Assembly: GCF_032191835.1 (NCBI RefSeq)
Contig: NC_083225.1
Span: 149,544,001-149,608,000, forward strand
Direction of reading: 5' to 3'
Length of the DNA: 64,000 nt
Origin: Heteronotia binoei
Taxonomy: Eukaryota
The position numbers and the translations under genes are program-made. The notes under the pieces were generated by a model that was not told where the DNA came from, did no database searches, and saw nothing but the letters and a program-made list of their open reading frames with translations. Of this stretch, positions 4,103 to 61,126 are shown one piece after another (positions within the stretch are counted from its first letter, which is position 1; each line of letters starts with the position of its first letter).

Positions 4103-4470
4103 CATAAGAACATAAGAGAAGCCATGTTGGATCAGGCTAATGGCCCATCCAGTCCAACACTCTGTGTCACACAGTGGCCAAAACCCAGGTAACATCAAGA
4201 GGTCCACAGTGGGGCCAAACTCCAGAAGCCTCCCTACTGTTGCCTCCCAAGCACTAAAAATACAGGGCATCACTGCCCCAGACATAGTGTTCCATCCATA
4301 CCTTGCAGCTAATAGCTACTGATGGACCTCTACTCCATGTTTATCTAATCCCTTTTTGAATCTATGTTTGTAACCACCACCACCACTTCCTGTGGCAGTA
4401 AATTCCACATGTTAATTTCACATTGGGTGAAGAAATATTTCCTTTTATCAGTTCTAAACCTACTGCTCCT
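4103..4470 (-). mobile_element. CR1 LINE 3' fragment (TTCTTATG-tailed family)
   Basis: aacataagagaagccatgttggatcagg 3' end with an adjacent RT tail. Same family as 7438, 13430, 26370, 34205, 46877 and 57865. Confidence 0.8.
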
Positions 4471-6472: not shown

Positions 6473-12347
<5,875 letters not shown>

Positions 12348-38621: not shown

Positions 38622-38800
38622 TTTTCCCGTGAGGAGAATGTGGACTGAACCAAATTACAGGAAGGGGGGAGGCGGTTGACGGCTTCAACCAGTCAGTGGC
38701 TAGGGGGAGACGAGATTCCGGAGGGGATGTGACTGCTTGTTCTCATAAAGCGGAAGTAGAGGGCCTGCGCTGTAGGTTTTAAAAGTAGTGTTACCCAATG
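38450..38800. promoter_or_regulatory. CpG-rich promoter of NEPRO (-), probably shared with the Spire-like gene (+)
   Basis: CpG cluster around NEPRO exon 1. YY1-type CCGCCATTTT overlaps the NEPRO ATG. ETS-type GCGGAAGT near 38750. No other CpG cluster seen upstream of the Spire-like ATG. Confidence 0.65.
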
Positions 38801-40672: not shown

Positions 40673-41410
40673 AATCCCCATTAAATTCAATGAGACTTAT
40701 TTCTGAGTGAGCAACAAATTGGCTTGGTAGGTTACTAGTCTTGTCCAAAGCAAAAACTGTGTCTTGTGTAATACTTTTTAATACTGTAGTTCCAGGTCAT
40801 AAAAGATTTGTTACATCCTACTGAGGGAGCATATACAGCCAGTATGTGTTTATTTAAGTTCGGATGTGCTACAGAGAATTTGGGGAACCTTGAGAAATCA
40901 CGGGGGGCGTCATATGATTTGGAAATTTCCTCCCCACATCCAAATGTCTCCATACATGATTCTCAGGGGTTCTCTCCCCCCTCCCTTTTAGTTGGTTCAA
41001 CTGCTCTTAGCATTTGTGCCTCCTGGAGCATTATTGAGTCTTTGCATTATTTGGTTAGTTCACAAAGTTTTCAGCATATTTGGGAGGTGCCTTGAATTAG
41101 AAGAAACCCTAGCCTACCTGTTGCTGACCCAGTTTTACTGCTTTTGTAACTGAAAAAGCAACCCAGTTGGCTACTGGATGATGTGGTGGTAGTTTTCATC
41201 CCACATCCCTACAGTGCGCAAAAATGTTACTACAACTTTAAGAAAGAGGAGCCTCATTCCCTCTAAACAGCAACACCTGCAATTTTTTTGAGCTATGACT
41301 CCACCCCCCCTCCACCACCCCCCTTTTTACTGGGCTATGGAGTATGAGGACATAAAAGGGTTCAAGGGTGCATAATTTATTTCTCTGTAAGGCAGCCAAG
41401 TTTGCAAAAA

Positions 41411-44400
41411 ATGGGGAAAGGGGGAGGGCAGCCTTCTAGTATGCATTATAAAAAAGATCTTGTTAAGGTCTCATTAGCTGAGTTTCTTCAATACTATGAA
41501 CAGCCGATCAGTGAGGAACAAGCATGGGCTATTTGTTTCCAGTGTTGTTATAAAATGAGAGAGTTAATGGCTCAAGGAGGAGATTCTGTGTTAAAGATGA
41601 TAGTCTTGGAAGATATTAATAACCTTTACATCCATTCTGATGGTAGTGTGTCTTTCACTGTACAGCAAAGTTTGAGTGGTAAGAATGATAATTGGAAGCT
41701 ATTTATATTAGTCTTGTGTCTCTGTGGTTTTTTGGGGGAGGGTTTGTTTTTCACCATTAAGTGTATGTTCTCTTCATTATTTTTAAAACTCCTAGTATAT
41801 TTATCCAAAATTAGGTTCTATTACTATTATTTGGCCTTCAACCAAAACATATTCATTCAGGGGATAGAAAAGTGTTATTTCTAGAAGTATGAGAGTGCTC
41901 CTTTGCAGTAATTTGACAAATTTAGTGAAGGAATGGTTAAATGTGCAGCTAATTCCTTTCTGGTTTTACTCAGCTGTTTATAATGCTATATTATCGTTTT
42001 GCAATTAATTGTTGTGCTGTTATAGTATTCCTTGATTTGTTTTTGTGCCTCTTTGTGCAGTATGAAACATAAATCTTAAAAGTTTGATCCTGTTTGGTAA
42101 AAATTAAAGTAATGATAATTTCTTAGCTACAGGTGAAAATTTTCAGAAATGTTACAATACATGATTGTATGTGTATATGGGAACACAGCGAAAGTAGAGG
42201 GTTGCTTCACAACTGTTCAGTTCTTGATTTTCTGTGAATGTGGTGAGAATGCTACAGACAATGAAAATGAAGTTCTAGGAACAGTAGGCTTGTCAGGTCC
42301 AATTTAAGAAATATCTGGGGACTTTGGGGTGGAGCCAGGAGCAAGGGTGTGACAAACATTGGAGCCCCGTGGCGCAGAGTGTTACAGCTGCAGTACTGCA
42401 GTCCTAAGCTCTGCTCACGACCTGAGTTCGATCCCCAGTGGAAGCTGGGTTTTCAGGTAGCCGGCTTGAGGTTGATTCAGCCTTCCATCCTTCCGAGGTC
42501 GGTAAAATGAGTACCCAGCTTGCTGGGGGGGGGGAAGTGTAGATGACTGGGGAAGGCAATGGCAAACCACCCCATAAAAAGTCTGCCGTGAAAACATTGT
42601 GAAAGTAGCATCATCCCAGAGTCGAAAACGACTGATGCTTGCACAGGGGACCTTTCCTTTTCCATTGGAAATAAGGATGGGGGCACCTTTTGGGGGGGCT
42701 CATAGAATTGGACCCCCTGGTCCAATCTTTTTGAAACTTGGCAGGTATTTTGAGGAGAGGCACTGGAAGCTATGCTGAAAATTTGGTGCATCTACCTCAA
42801 AAAAGCAGCCCCCCGAAGCCCCAGATACACAGATCAATTTTCCATTATACCCTATGGGAATTGGTCTCAAAAGGGAATAATGGCGTGCCCAGCAGACATT
42901 TCCCTCCTCCGCACTTCTGATGACCCTGAAGTGGGGGGAGGGTCTTCAAACCACAGGATCCCCTGCCCCCGCCTGGGGATTGGCAACCCTAAGGGACAGC
43001 AAGGGGAAGAGATTAAATAGAATGTATGTAGAATGTCTTTTTGCAGTTCCTGCTTCCTATACTTATAATGCAGATTTGTGTGTTAGATGGAGAGCAGCTT
43101 CAAATGGTGCTGGCTTTGAGTTAAGCCTAGCTTTTTTGGGTAAGAGGCAATGAATTAAACTTCACAGGTATTACCAGATTCTAACAAGTCTGCACTCTTC
43201 AAATATTATACACTTTAACATTTCTTTTCCCAAAGGCTACTGAAAAAACTAAGGGCTTTTTTTGCTATTTTTTGTATTCTTCTGTCACCTTGCTCATGTA
43301 TCCTTTCTTTTTCTCTCTTTCTTGTTCCAGACAGTCACATGACTCAGCAGCAGAATGAAAGGTTGGAAGATATGGTAAGGCTCAAACAATTATATGTCCT
43401 GTATTCTAAGCTTCAGTGCAACACAGATTGGCCATGTCTCATATATGGTACTTTGGTTGCTTGTTGATGAAAGAATATATTGTCATCTTGCTAGTGCTGT
43501 TCTCAAAGGAGTATATTGGAGCAAAATGAATAATTAGACTATGGGAAAGTCCCTTCTGGATGGATAGGGCTCAGCAAGTATGTTCCTTTTCTGGGTACTC
43601 TCTACACAAGTGCAGTTCTGGGTTGAAGAACAGCTCTAATACGCTTGGGTCTGTCCAGTTACAGAAGCATGCTATCTGTTGTTCTTTCCAGGCTGCCTTG
43701 CTGAGCCTGTGGGCACAACTCAGATTTTGAGAGCAGGTAATAGGTGCCAAAAACAAGCTGCAGGGGTAAGGATCAGCTATAAAATATTTGAGAAGTTCTG
43801 TGGAAAGTATCTTTTTATTCCATGATCGAAATAATTTTGAAATCAGTGTTCTCTGTAGAGATCTCTCATGCTCTTCTAAAGTATTTTCTACTCCAGCAAA
43901 GTGTAGGGAAGCTCTTAATGGCTCTTCCTTTGGAGAAGAAACAAGTAGGCATCTGGAAATTGGGAGGGACCATGATGCCCATTGACACCATGTTAATGCT
44001 GGACATAATCCTGGGCCACCCTATGAGCACTCTTGAATAGGACTAAGACTGTACCTTTAAGAAGGGCTAGGTATTCACAGCTGAGTGCACAATCACATCT
44101 CTGGAAGAAATATTGGTTGGAGGCAAGCAATGCTTAGAATGGAGCTTAGACCTTCATGCTGAAGAGAGGAAGTGGGTTGTTCATCTAAAAGTGGAATAGG
44201 ATTTCCTGATGGGGTATAATAGTGTAAAATTATGCAATCATAGTAGGGTACCAGCAGCATAGGAATATCCCCTTAACTATCTAAATTATCCATTTGCGCA
44301 TGTTGTGGCCAGCTCATAGTGCCCAGGAGCAAGGAGTAGGAAGGCAAGAAATGTGAAATTGGCAGTGATGCATGTTGAAATGAAGAGTATTTATGCAGCT

Positions 44401-46954
44401 ATTCCTTGGAGGCTATCAATATAAATGGTTTGATAAAATTTGCATTGCTTCCAGTTTCCATCTGAAATTACCATTCAGCAACTGCTTCTATGGACAGAAA
44501 TTAAAATTCTGGAATTGTTAAGTTCTGCTGACTTATGCCATCTTTACCTTGTAAATGTTGGCAAAATTGAGGTTTATGGTCAGAAAGGGTAACATTTGAT
44601 TCTCTACGAAACTGGTTCCCTAGGAAACGATTTCTCTATGCCTTAGTCTGATGTTGTCTTTTTGAATTAATAGGGTATCCCTGAATTTCCTTTATAGCTC
44701 ACAGAACTACTGGGAAAGTTGGTTTACAGAGCACTGGACTGGGGAATTGAGAGCCATATGGAGAGAGAGTTGAGTGAGTCCTTGGAGAAGCTAATATCCT
44801 TTATGCTGAAGTTGAATCTAGAGGCAACACAGTCAGCAGTGACTTTCCAAGATGTCATCAAGGTTTTGCTTTTGCTTTTATTTCTATAATCTAGCTACAC
44901 TTTTAGGCATTCATTCTTGCTCTGCCCAGGCCTCAGATTCAGTGGGAGCTCACAAGAGCGCAGCTCCTGAACCTTTCTGAGAGTTCCACCTCCTTGTCCA
45001 TTGAATAGTATGTGCAGCTGCATAATAATCCCTGGATGAGCTCCACCACCTATTTTTCTACAAAATGACCCCTGGCTGTGCCTGAATCTCCATTTTAGAA
45101 TAGGGAAACTGGTTTGTGCTGTAAAAATTGCAATGGCTTTTTACAATGGAAAAATGGAATGGGAAGAGGAAATTCGGACTATATTATGGGTTCTTAGTAC
45201 TCCAATGGACAGGAAGCAAAGGAGAAGAAAGCCATGTATGTACCATGCACATACTTCTTGTGTGTACTATGCACATACTTCAAGTAATTGCCCAAGTATG
45301 TGTGTTTTTGTGCCATTCTAACTGTCTAAATGAATGGTAATATCTTAAAGCTAGATATTTTAAGGTTCTCTGGGAAAGATGGATGTAGAAGTTTTATTTC
45401 CGAAATAGAGGACTTGTGATGGATTATGGGTAGCTTGTTTTTTTCATGCCTGCCTGATAATCAGCAGACAGCATAGCATGGGAAGGCTATTGGTAATACC
45501 AGGCTGACTCCCTGTGATTAGAAATTCTCTTCTCCTTTATGATGTTCAGTCCTTTGGAACCTAAATAAACTTGAACTCTGTATTCTATTTCATTATAAAT
45601 CTTTTAAACAGGAATCCAGAGATAACTTCTCCTTTTTCATTTTAGATCTGTGAAGATCACTTTCTCAAGCCTTCTGAAGCTGCTGATCATTACACCGTGA
45701 TCTGTCGAGTGCTCTTTGCTGAGTACATAGAACTTCAGAAGCTCATGTTGACCATACAGAGATGCAAAGAGGTATTTTGGAATGCAGATGTAGTGTCCAC
45801 CTGTTTTCTTCCATTGCAACATTTTCATTGTGTTGTCTTTTGAAGCTGGAAGAAAAGTTATACAAGGGGTTAGGAGAAGATGTAGTCTAACTGCTTTGGT
45901 AGAACAAACAAATTACAAAAGTCTTTTAATGTCTTTCAGTATTTGGGAAGAATGGATGTTGAAGACTGCTGTCCAAGGCAGAAGGCTAATGATTGGGTAG
46001 GGATAACCGTTTGGCTTGTTTCATATTAAGTTTTACGTTTTAAAAGTTCTCATTGAATTGATGAAAACTCATACATACAGCAATTACTGTCCTGTAGGGA
46101 ACAATGTGTGAAAATTCAAGTAACCCCAACAACTGCCTGGCTAGATTAAAGGTCCATCTAGTCCAGAATTCTGCCAACTGGATGACTTGGGAGATTCATT
46201 GGCAGGGAATGTGGCATCACCAACCAAAGTTGGCCCAGTTATATACCATTTCACTCTCTTAAGTGCATTGCCTACTTTCCCAAGCAATGGGAATGAGTGT
46301 CTTTAAAATATTTTGCTTAAAGCAGAGCACCACAGAGGGAGGGGCAGTAAATATACCCGTGTAAATAGGCACTTGTAGATTGTATCGGATTCCCACACAC
46401 AGCCTCCCTTCAAGATTTGACACGTTCCAGCTGAGGCTATCTGGTTTCATCTTTGAACTTCCTGTGGCTTCTAGCTGCTGCTATACCACTCCTGTAACTT
46501 TTAGGATCATTTATTCCAAAAGCTGCTGAGTAATTCCTATTCCTCCATCATTGGCTTCCACAAAAGCATCAACCAACCATCCTAGAATACCACCTATCTG
46601 GGAGCTGGCCAGAACCTGCAGTGCTATATCTCTATGTGCCTCTTTCCCAAACCCCTTCAGTGATTCTGTGCAATCTGCAGTGCTGTGTATGATGGGTGTT
46701 CATGTGGCCCTCACTAGTTTCATTCAAGGGACAGTTCAGTTGTGATACTCCTTTTTTTTTTTAAGGAAAGAGAAAACTAATTGCTCCCCGTGCAGATTAG
46801 GCTAGTCAGAGGCTGGTGTCACCTGTGTCCCAAATCTGTTGCCTCCTATAGCCATTCTGCTGATATTTTCATGTAGAACATAAGAACATAAGAGAAGCCA
46901 TGTTAGATCAGGCCAATGGCCCATCCAGTCCAACATTCTGTGTCACACAGCGGC

Positions 46955-47027
<73 letters not shown>

Positions 47028-50000
47028 TGTGGCTAATAGCCACTGATGGACCTCTGCTCCATATTTTTATCTAACCCCTTCTTGAAGGTGGCTATGCTTG
47101 TGGACGCCACCACCTCCTGTGGCAGTGAATTCCACATGTTAATCACCCTTTGGGTGAAGAAGTACTTCCTTTTATCCGTTTTAACCTGTCTGCTCAGCAA
47201 TTTCATCGAATGCCCACGAGTTCTTGTATTGTGAGAAAGGGAGAAAAGTACTTCTTTCTCTACTTTCTCCATCCCATGCATTATCTTGTAAACTTCTATC
47301 ATGTCACCCCTCAGTCGACGTTTCTCCAAGCTAAAGAGCCCTAAGCGTTTCAACCTTTCTTCATAGGGAAGGTGTTCCAGCCCTTTAATCATTTTAGTTG
47401 CCCTTTTCTGAACTTTCTCCAATGCTATAATATCCTTTTTGAGGTGCGGCGACCAGAACTGCACACAGTACTCCAAATGAGACCGCACCATCGATTTATA
47501 CAGAGGCATTATGATACTGGCTGATTTGTTTTCAATTCCCTTCCTAATAATTCCCAGCATGGCGTTGGCCTTTTTTATTGCAAACGCACACTGTCTTGAC
47601 ATTTTCAGTGAATTATCTACCATGACCCCAAGATCTCTCTCTTGGTCTGTCTCTGCCAGTTCACACCCCATCAACTTGTATTTGTAGCTGGGATTCTTGG
47701 CCCCAATGTGCATTACTTTGCACTTGGCCACATTGAACCGCATCTGCCACGTTGACGCCCATGTAGTGTTAAGCAACTGCTTTTTGGAGTAGAGGAGACT
47801 AATGAATTAGATTGTAATTTAAAGGCAAATGTTAAAGTTTCTGTAATGAATACTTCAGCCTAAGTCCTGTCCATACAACTGTTATGCAAGTTCTTGTACC
47901 TATGGCAATGCAGAGACAGTTTAAGTAAGGAACTCCGACCTGAGTCTCTGAATGTATGACACTTTCATATTAACAGTCATTTGCTATATTAAATGCCGGG
48001 TACCATCTTGGTAAAATATGTTCTTCAATCTGAGCTTCCTTTTTAGGCTGATTTATGGCAAGATGTACTTGGTGGCTTGCAGAAGGGTGCGAGGCTCCAC
48101 AAGGCCATGGAACACCCACAGCCCAGGACTTCTTTGAAACAGTGTTCCTGCTCTCTGTATGATACAGTGGTAGATGATATCAAAAATAAACACTACACCC
48201 TCCATAAGGTGAGTAGTATTGGCCAGGTAGGGGTGCCAGCCTCCAGGTGGGATCTGGGGACCCCCCAGAATTCCAGCTTATCTCCATTCTAACTGCGATC
48301 CTTCCCGCTAGAGAAAAATGGATGCTTTGGGGAGTGGACTCTATGGCATTGTACCCATCTGTACTCTTCATCCCCAAAGCTCCAGAAGTTTCCCAACCTG
48401 AAGTTGCCCCCCCGCCAGTCAGCTGGCCACTCATTTTATTATGCACCCTTATTTGTCATCGTTGGAGTGTATTATACTTCGTACTTGGTAAAGATGAAAC
48501 TGCTCACTGACATGCCTGTCTCAGAATTATGGTCTTGTCAAACAAACCACATTTACTGTGTTATATCACAACACAGTCTTGTATTGGACCAACATTTTTT
48601 TTAAAAAAACCCTGTTGTATCCTTTTGGCTTTGTACTTTTCATAGTACCCCATCCCCTAGAGAAGAAGACCTTTAGCTTTGATTCATTGTGTTTATTTGA
48701 GGGCCAAAGCAAGGAGGAGGATACGTACGCTATATCCAAGAGATAATCGGAGTTTTTGAAGTGGCTATCCTCAGTGCAGTGTGTATGAGTGAGAAAAGAC
48801 TTCTGGAGAAGGTTGAACATTGGCATACAGGAGCACAGCATTAAAAAAAGAAAACCTTGGATAGAACTGATGGGTGACAGCCATTGTTAAAACTTGGCTC
48901 ATGCTCTCTGCCCCTCACCGATTTTGTGGTATTATTGGCAAGCTTTGTTACCAGCAATGAAAGCAGTTTATTTTCTTAGAGTGAATATAGGGATAAAATG
49001 TGTTATTTTCAGTTTCCATCCAAAGCACATCTGAACCTTAATGTTAACCTAGGGTTCTTTTTTGTGTTTGAAGGCATGAAGAAAACATTTGCATCAACAG
49101 TGTAGTAGGCAGGGCTTCTTTTGAGCAGGAACGCACAGGAATGCAGTTCCAGCTGGCTTGGCCAGTGCTCCGGCTAAAAAAAAGTCTCCAGCAGAGGGAA
49201 GGCGCTAGGCAGCCATGCACTCCCAGACCACGCACTCCATCCTCTCTGCCACCTCCAGCCTCCCAATCGGCTTGTGAAGAGAACAAGAGATAAATTCATA
49301 GAACATGGTCATGTAAAGAGATGTGGAGCCGCCCATGAGCTTCCTGGGAGAAGCTGGGCCTTTGCAATTGCAGCCAAGAATCATTTTGTTTTTACATTGT
49401 TTGTGCTGCAGCTAACACTTCTTTTGGGTTTTTTTTTTTGTAGTACTTCCTCCAGTGTTTTAAATGTATAAGGGTTTTCTGCAACCCTGGGTATCTTCCC
49501 AAAGTTGCAGAAATATTTCTCAACTTTTTACATGATATTTTAACAAAAAGATTTATTATACAAAATATCAAAATGTTGACTATGCAAAGTAAAGAGATAG
49601 TAATATGTGACAGTCTATATATTTTAAGAAAGTATAGCAGATGCAGACTTGTATTTTTTGAAAGTATTCTCTATGCAGATTAAGACTGATTTGTAATCTT
49701 TATTTCTTATCCCTTCTTATCCCCTATTCCTAATTCTTTGAAACTAATAAAAACTTTTAAAATCAGAACATTGTAAGAGCTACATTTGTTTGTTTACCAC
49801 AGGAGTGAAATTGTTGCCTCTTGGCAATACAGTTCTTAGAGAGTTAGACTCTTCTAAATCCATGGACCTCAACAGGCTGAGAAATGAGTAACTCTATTTA
49901 CGATTACACTGTCAGTATCTAACTAAATGGCTTAGGCTTATGATGTTCTTTCAACATCTTCATAACAAATCTGACTTTGTTTGGCAGGCATCGACACGGC

Positions 50001-53000
50001 AACTGAGAGAGAGAGTCTGCCAGGCACCCAGTCTGCATGATCAGCTCATGATGGAAGTGAAAAAGCCCCCGAAGCTTCGACCAGTCTCTGCACACAAAAG
50101 TAAAAACAAACAAAAAGGTATACAATACCTTAGATGTGAACAACGACTAAAATAGCTTAGTTATTCAAATGACTGAAATGCCTAAGTGACTTATAAAGGC
50201 GGTACCTTTGTAATGTAATGTAATGTAAAATTTTATTTATACCCCGCCCTCCCCCGCCAGAGCAGGCTCAGGGCGGCTTACAACATTTAAAATGAACAAT
50301 ACAATAATAAAACATTAAGAACACATTAAAACCAATCAGTGATTAAAACATTCCTAGACTAACAGTGGCGGTAAGCATTATTAATTTAGCAGTAAACATT
50401 GGTACCATCATTAATGAACGCCTGTTTGAAGAGGGCGGTCTTGCAGGCCCTGCGGAACTGATCTAAGTTCCGCAGGGCCCGCACCTCCTCTGGGAGCTGG
50501 TTCCAGAGTTGTGGGGCTGCGGCGGAAAAGGCCCGAGTGCGGGTGCTTTGCAGTTTTACTTCTTTCGGCCCAGGGATATTCAGTTTATTTTTGCCTACTG
50601 ACCTCAGTGCTCTCTGGGGCTCATATGGGGAGAGACGGTCCCTCAGGTAGGTCGGTCCTTGGCCATATAGGGCTTTAAAGGTTATGACCAGCACTTTGTA
50701 CCGGATCCGGTATACAATCGGCAGCCAGTGCAGTCCGCGCAGCCCAGGCCGTATATGCCTCCATCTTGGAAGACCAAGTAGTAGCCTGGCTGCTGCATTC
50801 TGCACTAGCTGCAGTTCCCGGGTCCGGTATAGAGGCAGCCCCATGTAGAGAGCGTTACAGTAGTCCAGTCTTGAGGTGACCGTCGCATGGATCGCCATCG
50901 CTAGGTCCTGCCGCTCTAGGAAAGGGGCCAACTGCCTCGCCCGCCTCAGATGAAAGAATGCTGACTTGGCAGTGGCTGTTATCTGGGCCTCCATTGATAA
51001 TGAAGGCTCCAGTAAAACACCCAGGCTCTTCACCCGTTGCGCCGTCTTCAGTGGCGCCCCGTCAAAGGCCGGGAGAGATATTTCCTTCCCCAGAGTGCCA
51101 CGACCCACCTGGAGAACCTCTGTCTTCGCTGGGTTCAACTTCAGCCCGCTCAGTCTGAGCCACGTTGCAACAGCCTGCAAAGCCCGGTCCAGGTTCCCCG
51201 GGGCGGAGGCGGGCCGGCCGTCCATTAGTAGATAGAGCTGGGTGTCATCTGCATATTGATGGCTTGATGTGGTTCTGCTTCTGTTAATCATGGTTCTATA
51301 TAGGAACTGTAAAGGAAAGAAGCAGTGTCTATGTAAATAAAGGCATTTAGCTATTTAACAGCTCTTACTGGTGGTTCAAATCTTTCAGAACGAGGAAATG
51401 TTAGGTAGAACAAATACTTTGTGATGACAATACAGTCGTTTGAAAAACCGCATTCAGAATTCTGGTCTGCGGTACACTGCTCATTATAGTAGTGTCCAAT
51501 GATATGCATATGTGAGTGTGCTGTCACAGTATCAGTTATAATTTCTCACATTCCCTTTCAATAGAGTCTCTTCAGGTTTAGCTACCAGTAGTCAAATGAT
51601 ACATGTGTAACTAGCCCAAAGTAATTGATGTTATTAAGTGATCTTGCAGTGACTGGTATTAGGGGGACAGTGTTTTTTATTGAGCAAATGGATAGTTTAA
51701 ATAAGTTAAATAGATGACACCAAAACTGGAGAATAAGCTCCTCAAAAAGAGTTAAGCTTCAGAAAAGTCACAAACAGTGCAGTTCTAAGCAAAATTGTAC
51801 TGTGAACGTTATTTGAAAGTTCATTGGGCTCCAAAACCTAATTTGTGAAATATCAGATATACCAGCACAAAAGTTGAACGTGTCTTGTTCAAGAAAGGTG
51901 GGGACAGAGAGGCAAGGGAGAAGTTATTGACAGCTGATAAAACTGCACATATTGGTGATATTTGCCCAAAGGGGCAAACTCTGGATTCTAGAATGTGAGA
52001 TTAAATGGAAGGAAGCGTTGAGAACTGTTGAAGGGGAATTTGGACACAAAAAGAGAAAACAGTTTGAACCCAGCTTTTGCCAAATAAACATTCTGTATTA
52101 AGCTGGGAAATCAATTCAGATTTGTCTCTGCAGCCTTACCTTGGCAGAAACACAGCATACATGACTAGTTTTGTTTGCTTTATTTACATGCATCCTTTTT
52201 CTTTTGTTGCCTTATGATGTGTTCTGTGGCTTTTCAGAAGACTTTGGCAAGTTCTCCTCAAATACTCCATGTGATATCATCCTTGACCAAAATGTTGGCT
52301 CAAATATAACTGTTTCAAAAGCTAAAAAGCTAAGGTTGAGTTGCATCCAGTCAGATCCCGAACTTAAGGTATTTTTTTTCTTACCACAGGGTACTGTAAT
52401 GAAAACAAAAATTCTGTATTGGTATCCAGTTTTCCTTGCAATATGTCGTCTAGGTGGGTGGGTTTGCAGCTTTCTATCTCTTCAGTCTCACTAAATGTAG
52501 TGATTGTAACCATTCATTTCTGCAGGGATCTCCAAGTACCAAAATATTTAGCTCTGATTTTTACAGAGAACCTGCAGTGGAAGAACTGCAGGGGACCTGA
52601 CTAAGTTTTAATAGCTAGGATTCTGCGGTTCAAGCAGATTGTTCCGTGTGCAACTGAATTATGTCACATGTTGCCACTAATGCAGTTCTCCAGTGTTCCT
52701 GTAGCTCCAATCATGCTTTTCTGTTGTATATTTATTGGTAAATTATTAGTATTTTGAACTCCTAAACAAACACCTTTAGCACATATTTTTGACAAACTGT
52801 GTTCTACAAAACTTGAATCAGTTCTGTGTGGGCAAGCTAAAACTAATGTGCAAAAGTAAAATTTAAAATATCCCTCAGTATTCAGGTAAACCTTGTTTAC
52901 TGTGAGCTCAGCCAGTATTAATGCATTTGACTTGTATATTTTGAAGTGCACTTTTAGGCAATTGCTTCTTTCTCCTGTGAAATTGGTGGGTACTAAATAT

Positions 53001-56000
53001 TTAATTTTGACTTAAGTTGTTCCTGCAGTGTTAAAGGTCATAAGAGAAACACTAGAGCATCTTCAGCAGATTATTTGCCAGACTCTGTAGACACATGGTA
53101 TATTGTCCTTTTCTAGAACCACATAATTGATCAGCAAAGTGTATTAAAGTCCTCTTAAGAAAAGTACACGTCTGAGGTTAATACAGGCTTGGAGATGGCT
53201 TCATTCTATCTCTGTTACACCTGCAGGTGAAGTTTTTGTTGCCATTATTACTGATATCATTTTAAGATGAACTTGCTTAGGTATCTAGAGTGAAGTTTGA
53301 GCCCAGTGACACCTTTAAGACCAACAAAGTTCTGTTCAAGGTCTAAACTTTTTTTGTGTTAAAACAATTTTTATTGGTAACATATGGCAGTTATATCTAA
53401 TACTAACAAAATATTAATAATTACTTAATGGCTTCCCCATACATTACCCTTTTCCCTTCCCCTCCCCCCCAGTCTTAATTATAAACATTGGTAACATAAG
53501 GTAACAATTTCTATTTCTACATCCTTAATCATTTTTCACCACCATCCCCTATATTACTTTCTAATTACCCTCCCCCCGTTACTTGGCTCCCGCTGATGAT
53601 AATAATTCAAAATAATAATATTTAAAGGTAATCTATTCTAATCAAGAACCAATATTTATACTCTATCTTCTAAAACTTAATCTTAATCATTATCAAAAAC
53701 TAACATTTAAAGATACACTTAACTACTAAAACCAAAAATTAGTATTCTTCTTTCTTCTAAGACTTAATCATTATCAAAAATTGTCCAATGTCCTTTTACT
53801 TTCCACTCTTTTTCTGCATATCTTCTAAATTTTTTCCACTCCATCTTAAAAACCTCCAAATCATAGTCTCTTAAAGTTCTTGTTAATTTGTCCATTTCAC
53901 TCCATGTCATAACTCTAAGGTCTAAGCTTTCATGTGCCAGCACACTTCTGCAGATACATGCTGCACCAAATAAATTACATTAAAAACTGTAAGATCTGTG
54001 AATGGCAATAAATTAGCATGAAATACAAGGATTTGAGGGACGGTGGCTCAGTGGTAGAACATCTGCTTGGTAAGCAGAAGGTCCCAAGTTCAATCCCTGG
54101 CATCTCCAACTAAAAAGGGTCCAGGCAAGTAGGTGTGAAAAACCTCAGCTTGAGACCCTGGAGAGCCGTTGCCATTCTGAGTAGACAATACTGATTTTGA
54201 TGGAACAAGGGTTTGATTCAGTATAAGGCAGCTTCATATGTTCAATTAACAAAAAGACCCTACCAATTATCTTAATCCAATCTCAGCTAGTACCCAGTAC
54301 TTACACATCTTGACTCTACCTGGCCTTTCCTGACAACCAACCCGCCCTCTCTTCTTATTTGTAATGGTTGAGGAAATTCTGTTTCACTGTATCTGAGGAA
54401 GTGCACTTGTACACGAAAGCTTAGAATTTGAATAAAACTTTGTTGGCCTTAAAGGTGTCACTGGACTCAAACCTTGTTCTGCTGCTTCAGTCCAACACCT
54501 GCATCTGTGTTCTAGAGTGCTTAGTTTAAATTGTTGCACAAATACATTAAAAATGATCAGATTCCTTTACACCAATACCGGAGAGTAGCGTTCAGTTTTA
54601 GCTTTAAAAAAGAGATGACAGACAAAGCTTTGATTTCTTGGCTTCATTCCTAGTTGTTGTCTACTTGCACTCGGAAGCCATCTACAAGATGGTCATTACC
54701 AACCCTTGCAGATTTGATGGGAACAAGATTTGCAGAACATGTGGCTGAAATGAAGGATTCCAGCCAAAGAGTCAGTATATTTTCTTCAAGGTTGCAGGTA
54801 CTTCAAAGGAACATTGCTACCTCTTCCTGATTTATTTCTTCCAGAAATGTCACTCTTGTCTTGTAAACTTGATCACATCATTTAAGCTTCCAAATCATTG
54901 ACTACAAATTGGTCATTTTAAAAAATTTTCCTGGTTTAAATTTAAAATACCAGTTTGCTCTCCCTTCCCAAGCATCATAAATATCACTGGTCTTGGTTTC
55001 ATAGTTACTGGAACAAATCTAAAGATTCAATCCAAAGCAGTGCAAACAGGATACAATGAAGGACTGCCTCCTCCCACGTTGTCCAGTCCACCAGTTAAGA
55101 TCGGCCAGAAACAGGTCTGTGGGAGCTAAGAGGGCACCAGTGAGGATTGTAACTTGGTGTAAGAGTGAGGCTCCAGACAGAAATTTCTTGTTCACATTTG
55201 ACTGTGTCTGGAAAGCCCTTGGAAGAAAGGCCAAGTGAACCCTCATTACTCACTGGCAAGTACATAAGGCCTTTGGGACTAGGGATGGCTGGCATCCCTG
55301 GAAGCTTTCAGGGCATAACGTCAACCCTCTGAAAGCTCCATGGTATTACTGCAGGTTTCCAGAGTGTTGGCTGTCTTTGCGGCTGAGTTTTCACCAGGAT
55401 TTGACATCATGTTGCTCTACATCATGTCTGCCTCCCCCCCACACACACACTATTTTTCCCACTGTCCTGGGTGCAAGGGCAGAAGGAGGGCCAGGCTGTC
55501 CAGAGATCATTCACCAGAACCAGGCAGATGGCATGCCTGTTTGGAACCCAGTTGTTTCCCACCCTACTTTAGATGAAGCTTCTCTATTTATTTAACCACA
55601 TTAAAATTTTGGTGCTAGTGCACCCATTGGGGTTGAGAAAGAAGTTGCCAGCCCTGAAGCGATCTTTTTCCTTGGAAATCAAGATTTAGAATATGCTACT
55701 GATCTACGTGCTGTCACACCAAACAGAATTGGAACTTCTACAGATTTTATCATCTTGTACTGCAAAAACTTGGCAACTCACTTGTTGCTTTCCATTCCCT
55801 TACAGGTTTGTCTTGCTTGCCATAATGAGTTGTTTATATGGCCTTACATTTGTCATCTTTGTAGCAGGTAAGCTGATTTGAAGCTCTTTTTTATGATTGG
55901 ATGAAACAGGTTTTCCTGTAGTTCACACTAATATAATATTCTATCAAGCCTTATACCCATTCCAGTCAAGATGGGAGCGAATATAATGTTTGAACTCTAT

Positions 56001-59000
56001 GACTAATCATAAAGATAAAGCACCAGTCGTTTCCATCTCCAGGGTGATGTTGCTTCACAGCGTTTTCATGGTAGACTTTTTGCAGGGTAGTTTGCCATTG
56101 TCTTCCCCAGTCATCTTCACTTTTCCTCCAGCAAGCTGGGTACTCATTTTACTGAGCTCCGGAAGGCTGAGTCAACCTTGAGCTGGCTACCTGAACCTAG
56201 CTTCCGCTGGCATCAAACTCAGGTCATGATCAAAAAGCTTGGACTGCAATACTGCAGCTTTACCACTCTGCACCATGAGACTGCACCATAAATTAGCTGT
56301 GGAAGACTCTTCACTTGATCTTCTACTAACTGGCCTTTAAATGCTATTGTAGCTATTACGTGTCCACCACATGGAAGTCTTCAGTGAACATATGAAGCCA
56401 CTGTAAAATCACATCACACCATCAGCCCTTCCACCTTGTCCTTATCTGTTCTGATTTGCAGCAGATCTCCAGGATCTCTGGCAGAGAGAGGACTTTCCAG
56501 TTACTTGAGATTTAGTTTATTTCCCAGGATCTTTGGGGTGTGCTTTGCTAAACAGACCTTCCCAGAGAAAGTAAAACACCCCAAAATGTATACTGCCTAA
56601 AAATGGGTGATCTTCTGCTTTCAGTTTTTTATTAACATTCATGGACAATTCTCTGTTGACATGCACTTATTGCTAATACTTGCTTTGCAGCTCGCCTGCT
56701 TGTAAGCATGAATGTTGTTGGAGTATACACAGGGATATTGGGGGGTGGGGCAGGATTCTAGGAGCCTGTTCTGTTTTCTCAGATCTCAGTCCACTCCAAA
56801 GGATTTCTGTACGAGTGGCATCCTAGCACGTACTGAGACAGATCACAACCTTATGCCCTCCACCCCACTCATGCTCCCATTCCATATTACCACAACTATT
56901 GACTGGCTGCACCTTTTTTATGTAAAGGGTCAGAATTGTTCACTGTTGCTTTCTCAGTGGATACTGTTACATGTCCACAGGAGTTCATAAAATCAGTGCC
57001 AGACTTCAGTGTCAACACCACTTCCAAAAATCAGCAATCCACAATTGCAGTATTAAAGTCCTGAAGGTGTAGGGTATATTTTAACGCCCCCCCCCCAATA
57101 GCTGTTTTGACTCAGATGGCTAGCCTTTCTACAATGAAGCCCAAGTCATTTCAGACAGATGTCCTAACCACAGGTTTGTTGACCTGAAACTGTCAAGGCC
57201 TGGGGCCTTCCTAAATGTAGGGCTCAAATAATTTTTTCATTGGATATACGAACATTAACTTTTATGTTGAAAGACTGGGAATTGATTCTGCCCTCTAGGC
57301 TCTGACAAGTGCTTGCTGGAGCTGTTGGGCAATTCTCTTCTACCATTTGAGCAGGGCTTTTTTGGTAGAAAAAGCCCAGCAGGAACTCATTTGCATATTA
57401 GGCCACACCCCTGATATCACCATTGTTTCACACAGGGCTTTTTGGTAGAAAAAGCCCAGCAGATGCTCGTTTACATATTAGGCCACACCGCCTGAGGCCA
57501 TGCCAGCTGGAATTGTGTTCCTGTGCGTTCCTGCTCAAAAAAAGCCTTGCATTTGAGAAATATGAGCATTTTCTTGCCATTGCCCCAATTCAAGCCTTTA
57601 ATGGTAACATGTGAAATAACTGTGCTGCAAACCCACAACAATATATAAAGAAACTGTGAGAACCAGTGCTTGTTTTACTCGTTAGTATCATGGCAACTAA
57701 GTGTCTTATGTCTTTCATTTTAGAGTGAACTGTAAGGATTGCTGTGTGAAGGTATGTTTTCCTCTTTCAATAGGTTATTGATCCATGAAAGGTCCTCTCC
57801 TCTTGTTCCAAGACTACTAACCTTTGTGGGAACCTTTTGAAGAATTTTGTTTAAATACTTTTTAAGAACATAAGAGAAGCCATGTTGGATCAGGCCAATG
57901 GCCCATCCAGTCCAACACTGTGTCACACAGTGGCCAAAAGACCCAAGTGCCATTAAGAGGTCCACCATTGGGGCTAGAAGCCCTTCCACTGTGCCACCCC
58001 CCCCCGCCAAGCACAAGAATACAGAGCATCACTGCCCCAGACAGAGTTCCAACAATAAGCTGTGGCTAATAGCCACTGAGGGACCTCTGCTCCATATGCT
58101 TATCCATTCCCCTCTTGAAGCTCTCTGTACTTGTAGCCACCACCACCTCCTGTGGCAGTGAGTTTGTATCTGAACTTCCAAAAAGCTCCTGCTCTGAGTA
58201 GCATGCTGCCTGGCTTCCAATATATTTAAAAGCTTGTTTTAAAAAATTAGCAATTTATCCCCAAATTCATTCTTGACATACCATGTTGCAGAGTTACATT
58301 TGGTGCAGCAGTCCCTTGTTTTGTTTGAGGGTTTGCGTGCAGTTGCCCTGAATCCTGCAATCTTTCTAAATACAGCCTGGTTGTATGCATGCATATGATA
58401 AACAATTGATACAGATGTCCAGAGATGACCATGCTGTGGGCCCAGTCAGGATCTGGTCCATGTTTCATTTTTAAATTACTTCATTAGGATTTAAAAATGG
58501 CAGCAGCATCAACAGGTCAGACCTGTGAACGCTGTCACATCTAGTTTGCCCCTCACTAGCATAACAGACAGGTGCCATTTGGAAAACCTTAATATGTGTT
58601 GTGTGGATTGCCACACTGACTTATAGCCAGTATATGAAATTCCCACATCATAATACAAATTAAGTTAACGTCTCCTTGAAGAAGGTTTCAGCATCCTGAG
58701 TGAGGGTAATGCAAAGGATGTGATGGGTGTACAAAGACTGCATGACTGTTTTCTATAGTTGGTAAAAGTAGTCCTCTGTGTAAGCACCAGTCGTTGCTGG
58801 CCCAAGGGGTGATGTCACATCAGGACATTTTCTTGGTAGACTTTTTAACGGTGGTTTGCGAGTGCCTTCCCCAATAATCTACACTTTACCTCCAGCAAGC
58901 TGGGTACTCATTTTACTGATCTCGGAAGGATGGAAGGCTGAGTCAATCCTGAGCTGCCTACCTGAACCTAGCTTCTGCTGGGATCGAACTGAGGTCGTGA

Positions 59001-60434
59001 GCAGAGCTTGGACTGCAATATCACAGCCTACCACTCTGCACCATGGGGCTCCTTCTATAGTTGGTACTGTTCACTAAATGCCATGACATTCTTCTCTTAG
59101 GTGACGATGCCAGTCAGGCCCTGCATACGCCTTCCACTTAACTTTTTCAAAATCATAAGATTCAGCAAAGAAGATCTGGCCCTACAAGGTCAGAAAACTC
59201 CACAGCTGTTATATGAAATAGAACACTGGGATTGTTCAAGGTAGGAGTTCAAAAGCCTACATCACTATGTATCCATAGGGCAAAATGCTAACTGCACTAA
59301 ATACTCTGTGTGTGTTCAAAAAATGGGATCTGACTCTTAGGTGGAATAGAGAAAATCAAAGAAACTGTGGCTATGAATTTGTATCTTGAAAATAATCCTT
59401 CAGAAGTAGACTAATTTATAGATGCCAGTTCAGAGAGCCACATTTAGGAGCAAATAATATATGCCACTAGAACTACATTCTGACTCAACTTTAGCTCTTC
59501 AGAATCCCACTTCATTTCCCAAGATGCTATTAATAACAAATGAGCATTATAGTCTTTCTCCTTAGAAAAAAAACGGCATCAAACAGTTAAAAGGGGAAAC
59601 AAGAATTGTATATAGGCTACCACCATCTTTGGCTCCTTCTTGCATTCATATCCTGCACCTGCAGCCTTTTACTGTGATGAAAATCATCATGTGGTCAAGG
59701 TCTCCCTTAGAACCCTGTGAATGGTGTTCAATACCCACTTCTAAATGCAGGTGGGTATAGTGCCTTTGGAGTAGCAGATCTCACTGCAGTCCAAAACAGG
59801 CTGTCAAATTGTCACTTGCTTGGTTCTTCTGGGTCAGTAAGGACTTCCATTTAATTTTGCTACTGCAAACTAACATGGCTATCCATCTGGAATTATTATC
59901 AGGGATTTATCTGTTCCACTTGTTATAAGAGACACCTGCATGTTTCATAAACTGCAGCAGGTAAAGGATACAGTCTCTATAATTAGCCTGTAAGTTTCCA
60001 GAATGCCATTGTGTTGAGAACAGAAGTCACACACACAAAAAAATATGAATTAGCAATATTTCTAGTAAATGAAGGCCTACCAAGGCAGCCTTTAAAAATA
60101 TTAAGGGAATAGTTTGTAAAGAAGTCCCAGGGAATTAGTTCTATACAGCCACTGCCTTATAGACCCTTTCTGACACTAGAGGGGAATGGATCCAGGGCTG
60201 TTAGAAAAGACTGAAAATAAATTCTTCCTTTTTGTAACTTCTAGAGTACCTCTGGTGCTTGAACCTCATTGCTTAACACCGCCCCTTGCATCTCGCACTA
60301 GAAGCATGATGAACTGGCCATCTCTGGACATCTGTATCAAATGTGAACAACACCTTCTGGAGATCCTCTCCCGTCAGGTTCAGCAGAAGAGTACTTGTAA
60401 GAAGAGATCCTTGTCGTGGACTGAATGGGAATAA
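41411..60434 (+). CDS. Divergent Spire-family actin nucleator (KIND + 3 WH2 + Spir-box + FYVE-type); join(41411..41678,43331..43374,44698..44862,45646..45771,45940..45996,48047..48208,49988..50117,52238..52368,54654..54797,55806..55867,57724..57751,59101..59240,60245..60434), about 548 aa
   Basis: Thirteen GT-AG exons join into one open frame of 1647 nt. KIND: [59 protein letters not shown]2: [56 protein letters not shown]. Spir-box-like: [22 protein letters not shown]-type Cys pairs: CLAC, CHLC, CKDCC, CIKC. The linker exons between 50118 and 54653 are less certain, and an upstream coding exon is not excluded. Confidence 0.88.
42285..42991. mobile_element. hAT-type MITE with a nested Sauria/Squam1-type SINE (about 42361-42660, +)
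   Basis: Termini taggcttgtca...tggcaacccta; TSD aggaacag/agggacag. The SINE has head ggagccccgtggcgcagagtg, B-box gagttcgatcccc and the ggggaaggcaatggcaaaccacc segment. Confidence 0.8.
46877..47759 (-). mobile_element. Young 5'-truncated CR1 with an uninterrupted RT C-terminal ORF, antisense in Spire-like intron 5
   Basis: ORF 47033-47776 without stops ([32 protein letters not shown]); TSD catgtag at 46870-46876 and 47760-47766; (TTCTTATG)n tail. Confidence 0.95.
46958..47027. repeat. (TA)n(CA)n microsatellite inside the CR1 3' UTR
   Basis: Directly visible dinucleotide runs. Confidence 0.95.
50212..51270 (-). mobile_element. L2-clade LINE, 5'-truncated at the YADD motif, open ORF, (TTACA)n tail
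   Basis: ORF 50386-51291 with [38 protein letters not shown] and LHWLPI; (gtaat)n on plus at about 50210-50228. Confidence 0.92.
53352..53916 (-). mobile_element. 5'-truncated L1 3' fragment (same family as 20296-22728) inserted into a Penelope-like repeat
   Basis: Shares ttaatcattatcaaaaattgtccaatgtcctttta with 20513-20550; TSD aaggtctaaRcttt at 53338-53351 and 53917-53930. Confidence 0.85.
54035..54245 (+). mobile_element. tRNA-derived SINE (Squam3-like)
   Basis: A-box tggctcagtgg, B-box gttcaatcc, then a non-tRNA body ending cagcttcatatgttca. Confidence 0.8.
56035..56278 (-). mobile_element. Sauria/Squam1-type SINE (another copy at about 58815-59052, -)
   Basis: gcaagctgggtactcattttactga...gctgagtcaacc is the reverse complement of the 42361 copy. 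Confidence 0.8.
57352..57546. mobile_element. hAT MITE (CAGGGCTTTTT family) with internal duplication
   Basis: cagggctttttttggtagaaaaagcccagcag occurs twice; reverse-oriented relative of 39021-39214. Confidence 0.75.
57865..58160 (-). mobile_element. CR1 3' fragment (TTCTTATG-tailed family)
   Basis: aagaacataagagaagccatgttggatcaggccaatggcccatcc. Confidence 0.8.
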
Positions 60435-60711
60435 TATTCCCCCTGCTCATTTGGAGGAAGACAAATGTGGATTGGTTCCATAAAGACCTAGACAGAAGAA
60501 CCCTCCTGCTAGTTCTCTGTAATTTTGAAGGGCCAGATACTGTTATCTGCACTTGGGAAGTTGCACTTAAAAAGAAAGTTATTTCAGAGAATTGGATCAC
60601 ATGGCATAAACAAACACTGAAGCACTTTCATAAGCCAGGCCGAACCCTCTCTCCCTTTTGCCACCTCTGAAGCCAGCACTTCAAGCACGCCACATTGAAG
60701 CTCACTGAATG

Positions 60712-61126
60712 ATTAAAACTATGTGCTTAGCACAAAGTCATAATGTAGGCTCTGAACGGGGTGGGGGGGTGACATCCTATTCCCCAGATATGGAGTGACA
60801 ACACTCTCCAGTATTCATGTACCTGGAAGGAAATAGATAACCACACCACTAAGCCCTCTCACTTTTACACACCTCCTGAGTATTCCATGGAAAGTCATCT
60901 GAGAAGAGCTGTAGATCGCCCTCTAAAAATTCTTTAGGATATTCTTTTGTGCTCTTTGCTCTCCTCTCCCAATGTGCTGATCCTTGTCTGGCAACATATG
61001 TAACTATATAAATTAGGGGGGTTGTTTTGATTTCTGAGTCTTAAGCAGGATTTGTTTTCCCTACTGTTGAGAATTTAAAAACCATTTTGATATTTCTGAA
61101 AAGATGGATGTGAAGAATGAAATAAA
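60712..61126 (+). terminator. Candidate polyadenylation signals of the Spire-like gene (ATTAAA 60712, AATAAA 61121)
   Basis: Hexamers about 280 and 690 nt downstream of the TAA at 60432-60434. Confidence 0.35.

What the first reader, a model, noticed from the sequence alone, without database searches (positions are those of the whole stretch)
48047..50117. Only three WH2 repeats: the WH2-C exon appears deleted
Seen: exon 48047-48208 encodes two WH2-like repeats ending LHKA and LHKA (canonical LKKV/LRKV). The next phase-compatible exon, 49988-50117, encodes [34 protein letters not shown]. That aligns in length (43 aa) and sequence with the linker-3 + WH2-D segment of SPIRE1 as I recall it ([34 protein letters not shown]). 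I found no phase 0-0 exon encoding a WH2-C-like repeat (AHEIILDFIRSRPPL) in 48209-49987; that intron holds MITEs at about 48225 and 49090. Known: Spire has four WH2s, and the C-linker3-D unit carries most nucleation activity in Drosophila Spire. Inference: this is a natural B-linker3-D fusion that may have altered nucleation, sequestering or severing activity.
Basis: partly seen in the sequence, partly recalled or inferred. Interest (0 to 1): 0.72.

Follow-up and report, generated by a model that had tools for sequence, protein, structure and literature searches.

The report
Gecko SPIRE3 lacks its third WH2
This gecko's third Spire actin-nucleator gene really has no exon for the third of the usual four actin-binding WH2 repeats, but all sampled lizards and snakes share this gap and it was reported for bird and reptile SPIRE3 in 2024, so it is real but ordinary.

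Summary
Window 41411-60434 is base-for-base the annotated SPIRE3-type gene of the gecko Heteronotia binoei (protein P0166, 548 aa, 13 GT-AG exons). Exon 6 (48047-48208, phase 0-0) encodes WH2-A and WH2-B. Exon 7 (49988-50117) encodes linker-3 and WH2-D. The two are joined directly.

In crocodile, turtle and frog SPIRE3, WH2-C lies on its own small phase 0-0 exon of 69-78 nt. A profile of that exon scores 41-46 bits in those loci. It scores 2.9 bits or less, no better than shuffled sequence, in the B-D introns of four squamates, this window included. None of the 84 open AG..GT candidate exons in the intron resembles any WH2.

All 16 squamate SPIRE3 sequences that span this region show the same B-linker3-D join, so this is an old trait of lizards and snakes and no oddity of this genome. 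Turtles, crocodilians and birds keep a decayed C cassette, and frogs keep an intact one.

Kollmar et al. 2024 (PMC11231147) already state that sauropsid SPIRE3 lacks the third WH2. The WH2 exons are under purifying selection (dN/dS 0.24), and one spliced RNA contig confirms the borders of exon 7. The effect on actin nucleation is untested. The "MITE" label was not confirmed. The scan held no similar note on other DNA.

The parts
41411..60434 (+). Whole SPIRE3-type gene (13 coding exons) of Heteronotia binoei
   Evidence: 19024/19024 bases identical to L002 = GCA_032191835.1 CM063327.1. The exon model reproduces P0166 exactly. KIND domain scores 139.7 bits. The gene sits in the third Spire clade with 100/100 support.
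45940..45996 (+). Exon 5, short spacer exon before the WH2 cluster (ends ...KANDW)
48047..48208 (+). Exon 6, phase 0-0, encodes WH2-A ([19 protein letters not shown]), linker 1 and WH2-B ([19 protein letters not shown])
   Evidence: dN/dS against Eublepharis is 0.18. A general Spire-WH2 profile gives B only 0.7 bit and does not report A.
48209..49987 (+). Intron 6 (1779 nt), where a WH2-C exon would lie; none is recognisable
   Evidence: Repeat-like stretches lie at about 48228-48353 and 49109-49163. Blocks conserved between the two geckos lie at 48534-48613, 48816-49104 and 49874-49980 (70-73% identity); they are not found in Pogona or Liasis.
49988..50117 (+). Exon 7, phase 0-1, encodes linker-3 ([14 protein letters not shown]) and WH2-D ([19 protein letters not shown])
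   Evidence: Weak match to the Drosophila Spire linker3+D construct 3mn7_S. D scores 7.9 bits on the Spire-WH2 profile. A 191-nt RNA contig matches 49986-50117 without mismatch and leaves the genome at both exon borders.

Best explanation
This is the SPIRE3 gene (the third vertebrate Spire paralogue) of the gecko Heteronotia binoei, with the WH2 layout typical of lizards and snakes.

Shown: In the ancestral layout WH2-C has its own small symmetric (phase 0-0) exon. That exon no longer exists in recognisable form in any sampled squamate. Exon 6 (WH2-A, WH2-B) is therefore spliced in frame to exon 7 (linker-3, WH2-D). WH2-B now stands at the distance from linker-3 and D that WH2-C has in SPIRE1: 14 residues between B and D here, against 14 between C and D in SPIRE1. 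The WH2-C helix is decayed in all three sampled archelosaur groups (turtles, crocodilians, birds), which keep a 23-aa cassette retaining only the ..PPLKP tail. The coding unit is absent from every sampled squamate, so it was gone by their last common ancestor.

Inferred: The decay began on the sauropsid stem. The protein still acts as a membrane-tethered, formin-cooperating actin assembly factor, using KIND, two or three WH2 and a FYVE-type C-terminus. It probably nucleates more weakly on its own than four-WH2 Spire proteins.
For: - Identity to the annotated locus and an exact exon model.
- A third Spire clade with 100/100 support and monophyletic squamates within it.
- C is a separate phase 0-0 exon in crocodile (L001 11640-11708), turtle (L007 12751-12819) and frog (L004 4594-4671).
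- The C profile scores 41-46 bits in those controls and 2.9 bits or less in four squamate introns.
- A clean 31-column gap in all 8 aligned squamates (A1), and the same direct join in 16 squamate species: 4 geckos, Pogona, Phrynosoma, Sceloporus, Anolis, Varanus, Hemicordylus, Lerista and 5 snakes.
- The crocodile and turtle C remnant is 83% identical over 133 nt.
- dN/dS is 0.18 for exon 6 and 0.35 for exon 7 between two geckos.
- A spliced RNA contig lies on exon 7.
- Published statements say that birds and reptiles have SPIRE1-3, that sauropsid SPIRE3 lacks the third WH2, and that nucleation needs at least two WH2 domains (PMC11231147).
Against: - No read or contig shown here displays the 48208/49988 joint itself. 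The 17 letters upstream in the RNA contig were not printed.
- Most orthologue sequences are automatic gene models, which could all miss a very divergent microexon.
- WH2-A and WH2-B score poorly against a Spire-WH2 profile, so the number of working WH2 domains is uncertain.
- Tuatara was not sampled, so the loss cannot be placed before or after the split of squamates from rhynchocephalians.
- The functional statement is inference.
Confidence: 0.9

Rival explanations
1. A WH2-C exon, or a fourth actin-binding segment, still exists in intron 6. It would be too divergent to recognise and would be included in some transcripts, as a cassette exon missed by annotation.
For: In crocodile, sea turtle and a frog the C exon appears as a cassette: predicted isoforms exist with and without it (P0015/P0154, P0185, P0158/P0130). 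The bird remnant is already hard to recognise. A 290-nt block, 48816-49104, is 73% conserved between two geckos.
Against: No candidate among 84 open AG..GT phase 0-0 segments resembles C or any WH2. Profile scores equal those of shuffles in four squamate introns, one of them only 450 nt long in a python. The gecko-conserved block is not conserved in Pogona or Liasis and holds no WH2-like frame. No gene model in 16 squamates includes such an exon.
Confidence: 0.05
2. The gene is a decaying or non-functional paralogue, and the missing WH2 is one step of pseudogenisation.
For: SPIRE3 was lost outright in mammals and euteleosts (PMC11231147). Squamate WH2-A and WH2-B are far from consensus. Snakes have lost the WH2-A helix. 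Predicted isoforms skip exon 6 altogether.
Against: The 548-codon frame is intact with canonical splice sites. dN/dS of the WH2 exons is 0.24. The KIND domain scores 139.7 bits. The gene is kept across all sampled squamates, some 200 million years of divergence. A spliced transcript contig exists.
Confidence: 0.04
3. The gap is an assembly error or a private deletion of this individual.
For: None found.
Against: The same architecture appears in independent assemblies of 16 squamate species. The window has no N. Intron length is similar in a second gecko: 1896 against 1779 nt.
Confidence: 0.01

Closest known systems
Sauropsid SPIRE3 as described by Kollmar et al. 2024 (Commun Biol 7:832, PMC11231147; chicken Gg-SPIRE3)
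   Same: Third vertebrate Spire paralogue, kept in birds and reptiles and lost in mammals and euteleosts. KIND plus WH2 cluster plus FYVE-type C-terminus. Third WH2 absent or unrecognisable. The window gene sits in this clade.
   Different: In this gecko, and in all sampled squamates, the whole C coding unit is absent. Birds, crocodilians and turtles still carry a 23-aa remnant exon with the ..LKP tail. The paper does not draw this squamate versus archelosaur distinction in the passages read.
SPIRE1 / SPIRE2 (four-WH2 Spire nucleators; P0073, P0054)
   Same: Same domain order. WH2-A, WH2-B, linker-3 and WH2-D align position by position. The spacing from the last-but-one WH2 to D is the same.
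   Different: No WH2-C and no linker-2. The LKKV-type tails of A and B read LHKA. Profile scores of A and B are near zero, against 22-26 bits per WH2 in SPIRE1. It belongs to a separate clade.
Amphibian SPIRE3 (Spea P0051, Hyla P0033, Xenopus P0236/P0238 'Eg6')
   Same: Orthologous clade with the same exon layout around the WH2 cluster.
   Different: Frogs keep an intact WH2-C (for example SPENFITDLIRVRPLKPA) on a 78-nt exon.
Mouse SPIRE1-KW deltaB,C and choanoflagellate Mb-SPIRE (two WH2 domains), assayed in PMC11231147
   Same: Spire proteins with fewer than four WH2 domains. Both still nucleate and depolymerise actin, but more weakly.
   Different: Those keep A+D or two WH2 domains. The gecko keeps A, B and D in a natural B-linker3-D arrangement that was not assayed.

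Membership tests
Spire family actin nucleators | N-terminal KIND domain | tested here: met
   Pfam PF16474 scores 139.7 bits, E 1.3e-40, in P0166. Exon 1 finds Spire proteins.
Spire family actin nucleators | Cluster of tandem WH2 repeats after KIND | tested here: met
   A, B and D align column by column with SPIRE1, SPIRE2 and frog SPIRE3 (A1). By profile score D is clear (7.9 bits), B is marginal (0.7) and A is not reported. The repeats are present by homology; actin binding by A and B is not shown.
Spire family actin nucleators | C-terminal Spir-box and modified FYVE zinc finger | tested here: inconclusive
   The cysteine-rich C-terminal exons (55806-55867, 59101-59240, 60245-60431) align with SPIRE3 and SPIRE1 relatives by tblastn. 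No Pfam family reached threshold there in P0166, nor in SPIRE1. The Spir-box was not examined separately.
Spire family actin nucleators | Myosin-5 globular-tail binding motif (GTBM) between WH2 cluster and Spir-box | not tested
   Not examined.
Canonical four-WH2 Spire architecture (A-B-C-D) | WH2-C between linker-2 and linker-3 | tested here: not met
   31-column gap in A1. No C-like coding segment in intron 6 or elsewhere in 41001-61000 above chance.
SPIRE3 (third vertebrate paralogue) | Groups with the third clade, apart from SPIRE1 and SPIRE2 | tested here: met
   IQ-TREE of 26 proteins: the S3 group is one side of a branch with 100/100 support. SPIRE1 has 100/98 and SPIRE2 100/100.
SPIRE3 (third vertebrate paralogue) | Sauropsid form lacks a recognisable third WH2 (PMC11231147) | tested here: met
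   In Eublepharis a gene with NEPRO_N lies head to head upstream. Not checked in the window itself.

The most novel reading that the evidence does not exclude
Squamate SPIRE3 may be a natural series of WH2-cluster reduction. The C exon is gone in all sampled squamates. The WH2-A helix is also gone in snakes. Predicted isoforms in Pogona, Anolis and a python skip exon 6 and keep only WH2-D. If these forms are expressed, SPIRE3 in this clade may have shifted from an autonomous nucleator to a formin-dependent monomer-delivery, capping or sequestering factor. The B-linker3-D join would then test directly whether the linker-3/D context, and not the identity of WH2-C, carries nucleation.
Probability: 0.3. 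Interest if true: 0.45.

Novelty: already known. Interest (0 to 1): 0.22.

Why it matters
Spire proteins are the model for actin nucleation by tandem WH2 repeats, and how many repeats and which linkers are needed is still debated. A conserved natural three-repeat form under purifying selection is a ready-made construct for that question.

The missing third repeat in sauropsid SPIRE3 is already in the literature, and the gene model is already in RefSeq. The gain here is small: the coding unit is wholly absent in squamates and survives as a decayed cassette exon in turtles, crocodilians and birds.

Tried and rejected
- Pfam on the two exon peptides found nothing. This is uninformative, because Pfam reports no WH2 even in SPIRE1.
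- PDB sequence search: exon 6 had no hit, and exon 7 had only a weak hit (E 5.4) to the Drosophila Spire DDD construct.
- Rfam on 47900-50300 found nothing.
- A search for terminal inverted repeats supporting MITEs found only two short, unconvincing pairs elsewhere in the intron.
- RNA evidence was thin. Only one public run holds part of the stretch, and it is kept as contigs.
- The loci of Paroedura (P0169) and Latimeria (P0049) could not be fetched. Whether the coelacanth model, which lacks C, is a skipped isoform or a true loss stays open.
- Two paper searches for the 'linker 3' claim (C-L3-D carries most activity in Drosophila Spire) found no held text. That claim rests on my recollection of Quinlan et al. 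2005 (Nature 433:382) and is not verified here.
- A relocated WH2-C in exon 8 (..PCDIILDQ..) was considered and rejected. It lines up with non-WH2 sequence in crocodile, and the C profile finds nothing in the coding exons.

Full report
**What is at the coordinates**

Splice signals flank them..tttag|GCT and AAG|gtgagt for the first..ggcag|GCA and AAG|gtatac for the second.

Stop-to-stop frames and tblastn with fetched relatives show a Spire-type gene on the + strand from 41411 to 60434. That interval is identical at 19024 of 19024 bases to locus L002. L002 is Heteronotia binoei GCA_032191835.1, CM063327.1:149585411-149604434.

A 13-exon GT-AG model reproduces the annotated protein P0166 residue for residue. 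P0166 is 548 aa and is named 'protein spire homolog 1-like'.
- Exon 6 is 48047-48208, 162 nt, phase 0-0.
- Exon 7 is 49988-50117, 130 nt, phase 0-1.
- The public gene model joins them directly.

**Which gene it is**

Exon 1 finds Spire proteins in an exhaustive HMMER search. P0166 carries a KIND domain at 139.7 bits.

A maximum-likelihood tree of 26 proteins separates three vertebrate groups:
- SPIRE1, support 100/98.
- SPIRE2, support 100/100.
- A third group, support 100/100.

The third group holds coelacanth, caecilian, frog, turtle, crocodile, bird and squamate sequences, including the window's protein. This is SPIRE3 in the sense of Kollmar et al. 2024 (PMC11231147). They report SPIRE1-3 in birds and reptiles and loss of SPIRE3 in mammals and euteleosts.

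**The WH2 cluster**

Alignment A1 covers SPIRE1, SPIRE2, frog, turtle, crocodile and bird SPIRE3, and eight squamate SPIRE3 sequences. WH2-A, WH2-B, linker-3 and WH2-D of the gecko align column by column with the references. A clean 31-column gap falls exactly where the others have linker-2 and WH2-C. The gecko therefore has 14 residues ([14 protein letters not shown]) between the tail of WH2-B and the start of WH2-D. SPIRE1 has the same spacing between C and D.

**WH2-C is a separate exon in relatives**

Exact peptide mapping shows the C segment on its own phase 0-0 exon:
- Crocodylus: L001 11640-11708, 69 nt.
- Chrysemys: L007 12751-12819, 69 nt.
- Spea: L004 4594-4671, 78 nt.

**Search for a remnant in the intron**

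- A profile of 18 C-exon peptides scores 41.6, 41.7 and 46.3 bits in the turtle, crocodile and frog B-D intervals.
- The same profile gives at best 0.2 bit in the Heteronotia intron, 2.9 in Eublepharis, 1.7 in Pogona and -0.1 in Liasis. These are within the range of shuffled sequence. An earlier, smaller profile gave the same result.
- All 84 open AG..GT phase 0-0 candidates of 13-50 codons in 48209-49987 score 0.3 bit or less against the C profile and a general Spire-WH2 profile. None fits a WH2 pattern.
- At the DNA level, the crocodile and turtle C exons are 83% identical over 133 nt. No squamate intron matches the turtle or crocodile interval.
- The B-D intron is 1779 nt in Heteronotia, 1896 in Eublepharis, 1354 in Pogona and 450 in Liasis. 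The B-D interval is 3.3-4.1 kb in turtle and crocodile.

These data show absence of a recognisable exon. They cannot separate physical deletion from decay in place.

**How old it is**

The same direct join is seen in every squamate SPIRE3 sequence that covers the region:
- Four geckos: Heteronotia, Paroedura, Eublepharis, Sphaerodactylus.
- Other lizards: Pogona, Phrynosoma, Sceloporus, Anolis, Varanus, Hemicordylus, Lerista.
- Five snakes: Liasis, Erythrolamprus, Pantherophis, Crotalus, Notechis.

Other groups differ:
- Turtles, crocodilians and birds keep a 23-aa segment (for example INSEQKIRSSEENIILLKPPLKP). Its amphipathic helix is lost and only the ..PPLKP tail remains. A Spire-WH2 profile gives it less than 0 bits.
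- Frogs keep an intact WH2-C.

So WH2-C is decayed in all sampled archelosaurs, and the coding unit is absent from all sampled squamates, which dates its loss to their common ancestor or earlier. Tuatara was not available.

[quoted passage not shown] The core of the finding is therefore already published.

**Is the gene alive**

- The frame is intact with canonical introns.
- Between Heteronotia and Eublepharis, dN/dS is 0.18 for exon 6, 0.35 for exon 7 and 0.24 for both. Counts are small.
- The only public run holding part of the stretch is an RNA library kept as contigs. One 191-nt contig matches 49986-50117 with no mismatch. It leaves the genome at both exon borders, with 17 letters before and 42 after. 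This shows that exon 7 is spliced as predicted.
- The two extra matching letters at 49986-49987 (AG) fit an upstream exon ending in AG, as exon 6 does. Many exons end so, and the letters were not printed, so the 48208/49988 joint itself is not shown by reads here.

**State of the remaining repeats**

A profile built from the sixteen WH2 units of SPIRE1, SPIRE2 and two frog SPIRE3 proteins gives these scores:

| Protein | WH2 scores |
|---|---|
| SPIRE1 | 22-26 bits for each of four repeats |
| Turtle, crocodile SPIRE3 | about 10-14 bits for A, B and D |
| Bird (Pterocles) SPIRE3 | 8.4 (A), 16.4 (B), 5.2 (D, partial match) |
| Gecko SPIRE3 | 7.9 bits for D, 0.7 for B, A not reported |

The tails of A and B read LHKA where the family has LKKV or LRKV. 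'Three WH2 repeats' is therefore right by homology and position. Only D is close to consensus, and actin binding by A and B is untested.

**Mechanism**

- Shown: the in-frame B-linker3-D arrangement, its conservation and its age.
- From the literature: nucleation by Spire WH2 arrays needs at least two WH2 domains. A mouse SPIRE1 lacking B and C, and a two-WH2 choanoflagellate Spire, still nucleate and depolymerise, but more weakly (PMC11231147). The four WH2 domains contribute unequally (PMC7183766).
- Inferred: gecko SPIRE3 still assembles actin together with a formin through its KIND domain, with lower autonomous nucleation than four-WH2 forms.

It could not be checked in the held library.

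**Verdict**

The feature is a clade-wide, annotated and published property of SPIRE3, and no event of this genome. The modest addition is the contrast between squamates, where the unit is absent, and turtles, crocodilians and birds, where it survives as a conserved but decayed cassette. Related points are listed under things noticed in passing.

Noticed in passing
P0152, P0160 (Liasis, Pantherophis); alignment A1 columns 2-14: Snake SPIRE3 also lacks the helix of WH2-A. Only the ..VRLQKA tail is left, so snakes have at most B and D.
   Followed up: partly
P0002 (Liasis isoform 2), P0164/P0165 (Pogona), P0175 (Anolis X2); corresponds to window exon 6, 48047-48208: Predicted isoforms in three squamates skip the phase 0-0 exon 6 entirely and join ..W directly to linker-3 and WH2-D. 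That leaves a one-WH2 protein. Not checked against reads.
   Followed up: no
L001 11591-11719 and L007 12701-12830: The decayed C cassette of crocodile and turtle is 83% identical over 133 nt including its splice flanks. Predicted isoforms with and without it exist (Crocodylus X2/X1, Chelonia X3, Caretta). The remnant thus seems constrained although its WH2 helix is gone. The frog Leptobrachium also has models with and without C (P0158/P0130).
   Followed up: partly
P0238, P0236 in the tree: Xenopus laevis 'Eg6 / spire-type actin nucleation factor 1 S homeolog' and its X. tropicalis counterpart fall inside the SPIRE3 clade and not in SPIRE1. Their public names look misleading.
   Followed up: partly
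P0181: A turtle SPIRE3 protein (Platysternon megacephalum, 643 aa, KIND domain) is named 'chitotriosidase-1' by its source. This is probably an annotation error.
   Followed up: no
window 48816-49104: A 290-nt block in intron 6 is 73% identical between Heteronotia and Eublepharis but absent from the Pogona and python introns. No WH2-like frame lies in it. Its meaning is unknown; it may be plain residual similarity.
   Followed up: partly
window 46744-47740 (also 50525-51320): Very high pile-ups of RNA-run contigs (summed depth up to about 268,000) mark high-copy interspersed repeats in intron 5. They include a TA-rich microsatellite at about 46950-47035. Similar repeat frames recur at about 4100-4300, 7600-7760 and 57860-58070.
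   Followed up: no
window 38506-38670 and L003 1-1794: The Eublepharis SPIRE3 model (P0177) has a different N-terminus. Residues 26-80 match window 38506-38670, upstream of exon 1, at 62% identity. In Eublepharis a NEPRO_N gene lies head to head with SPIRE3. This could be an alternative first exon or a model error.
   Followed up: no
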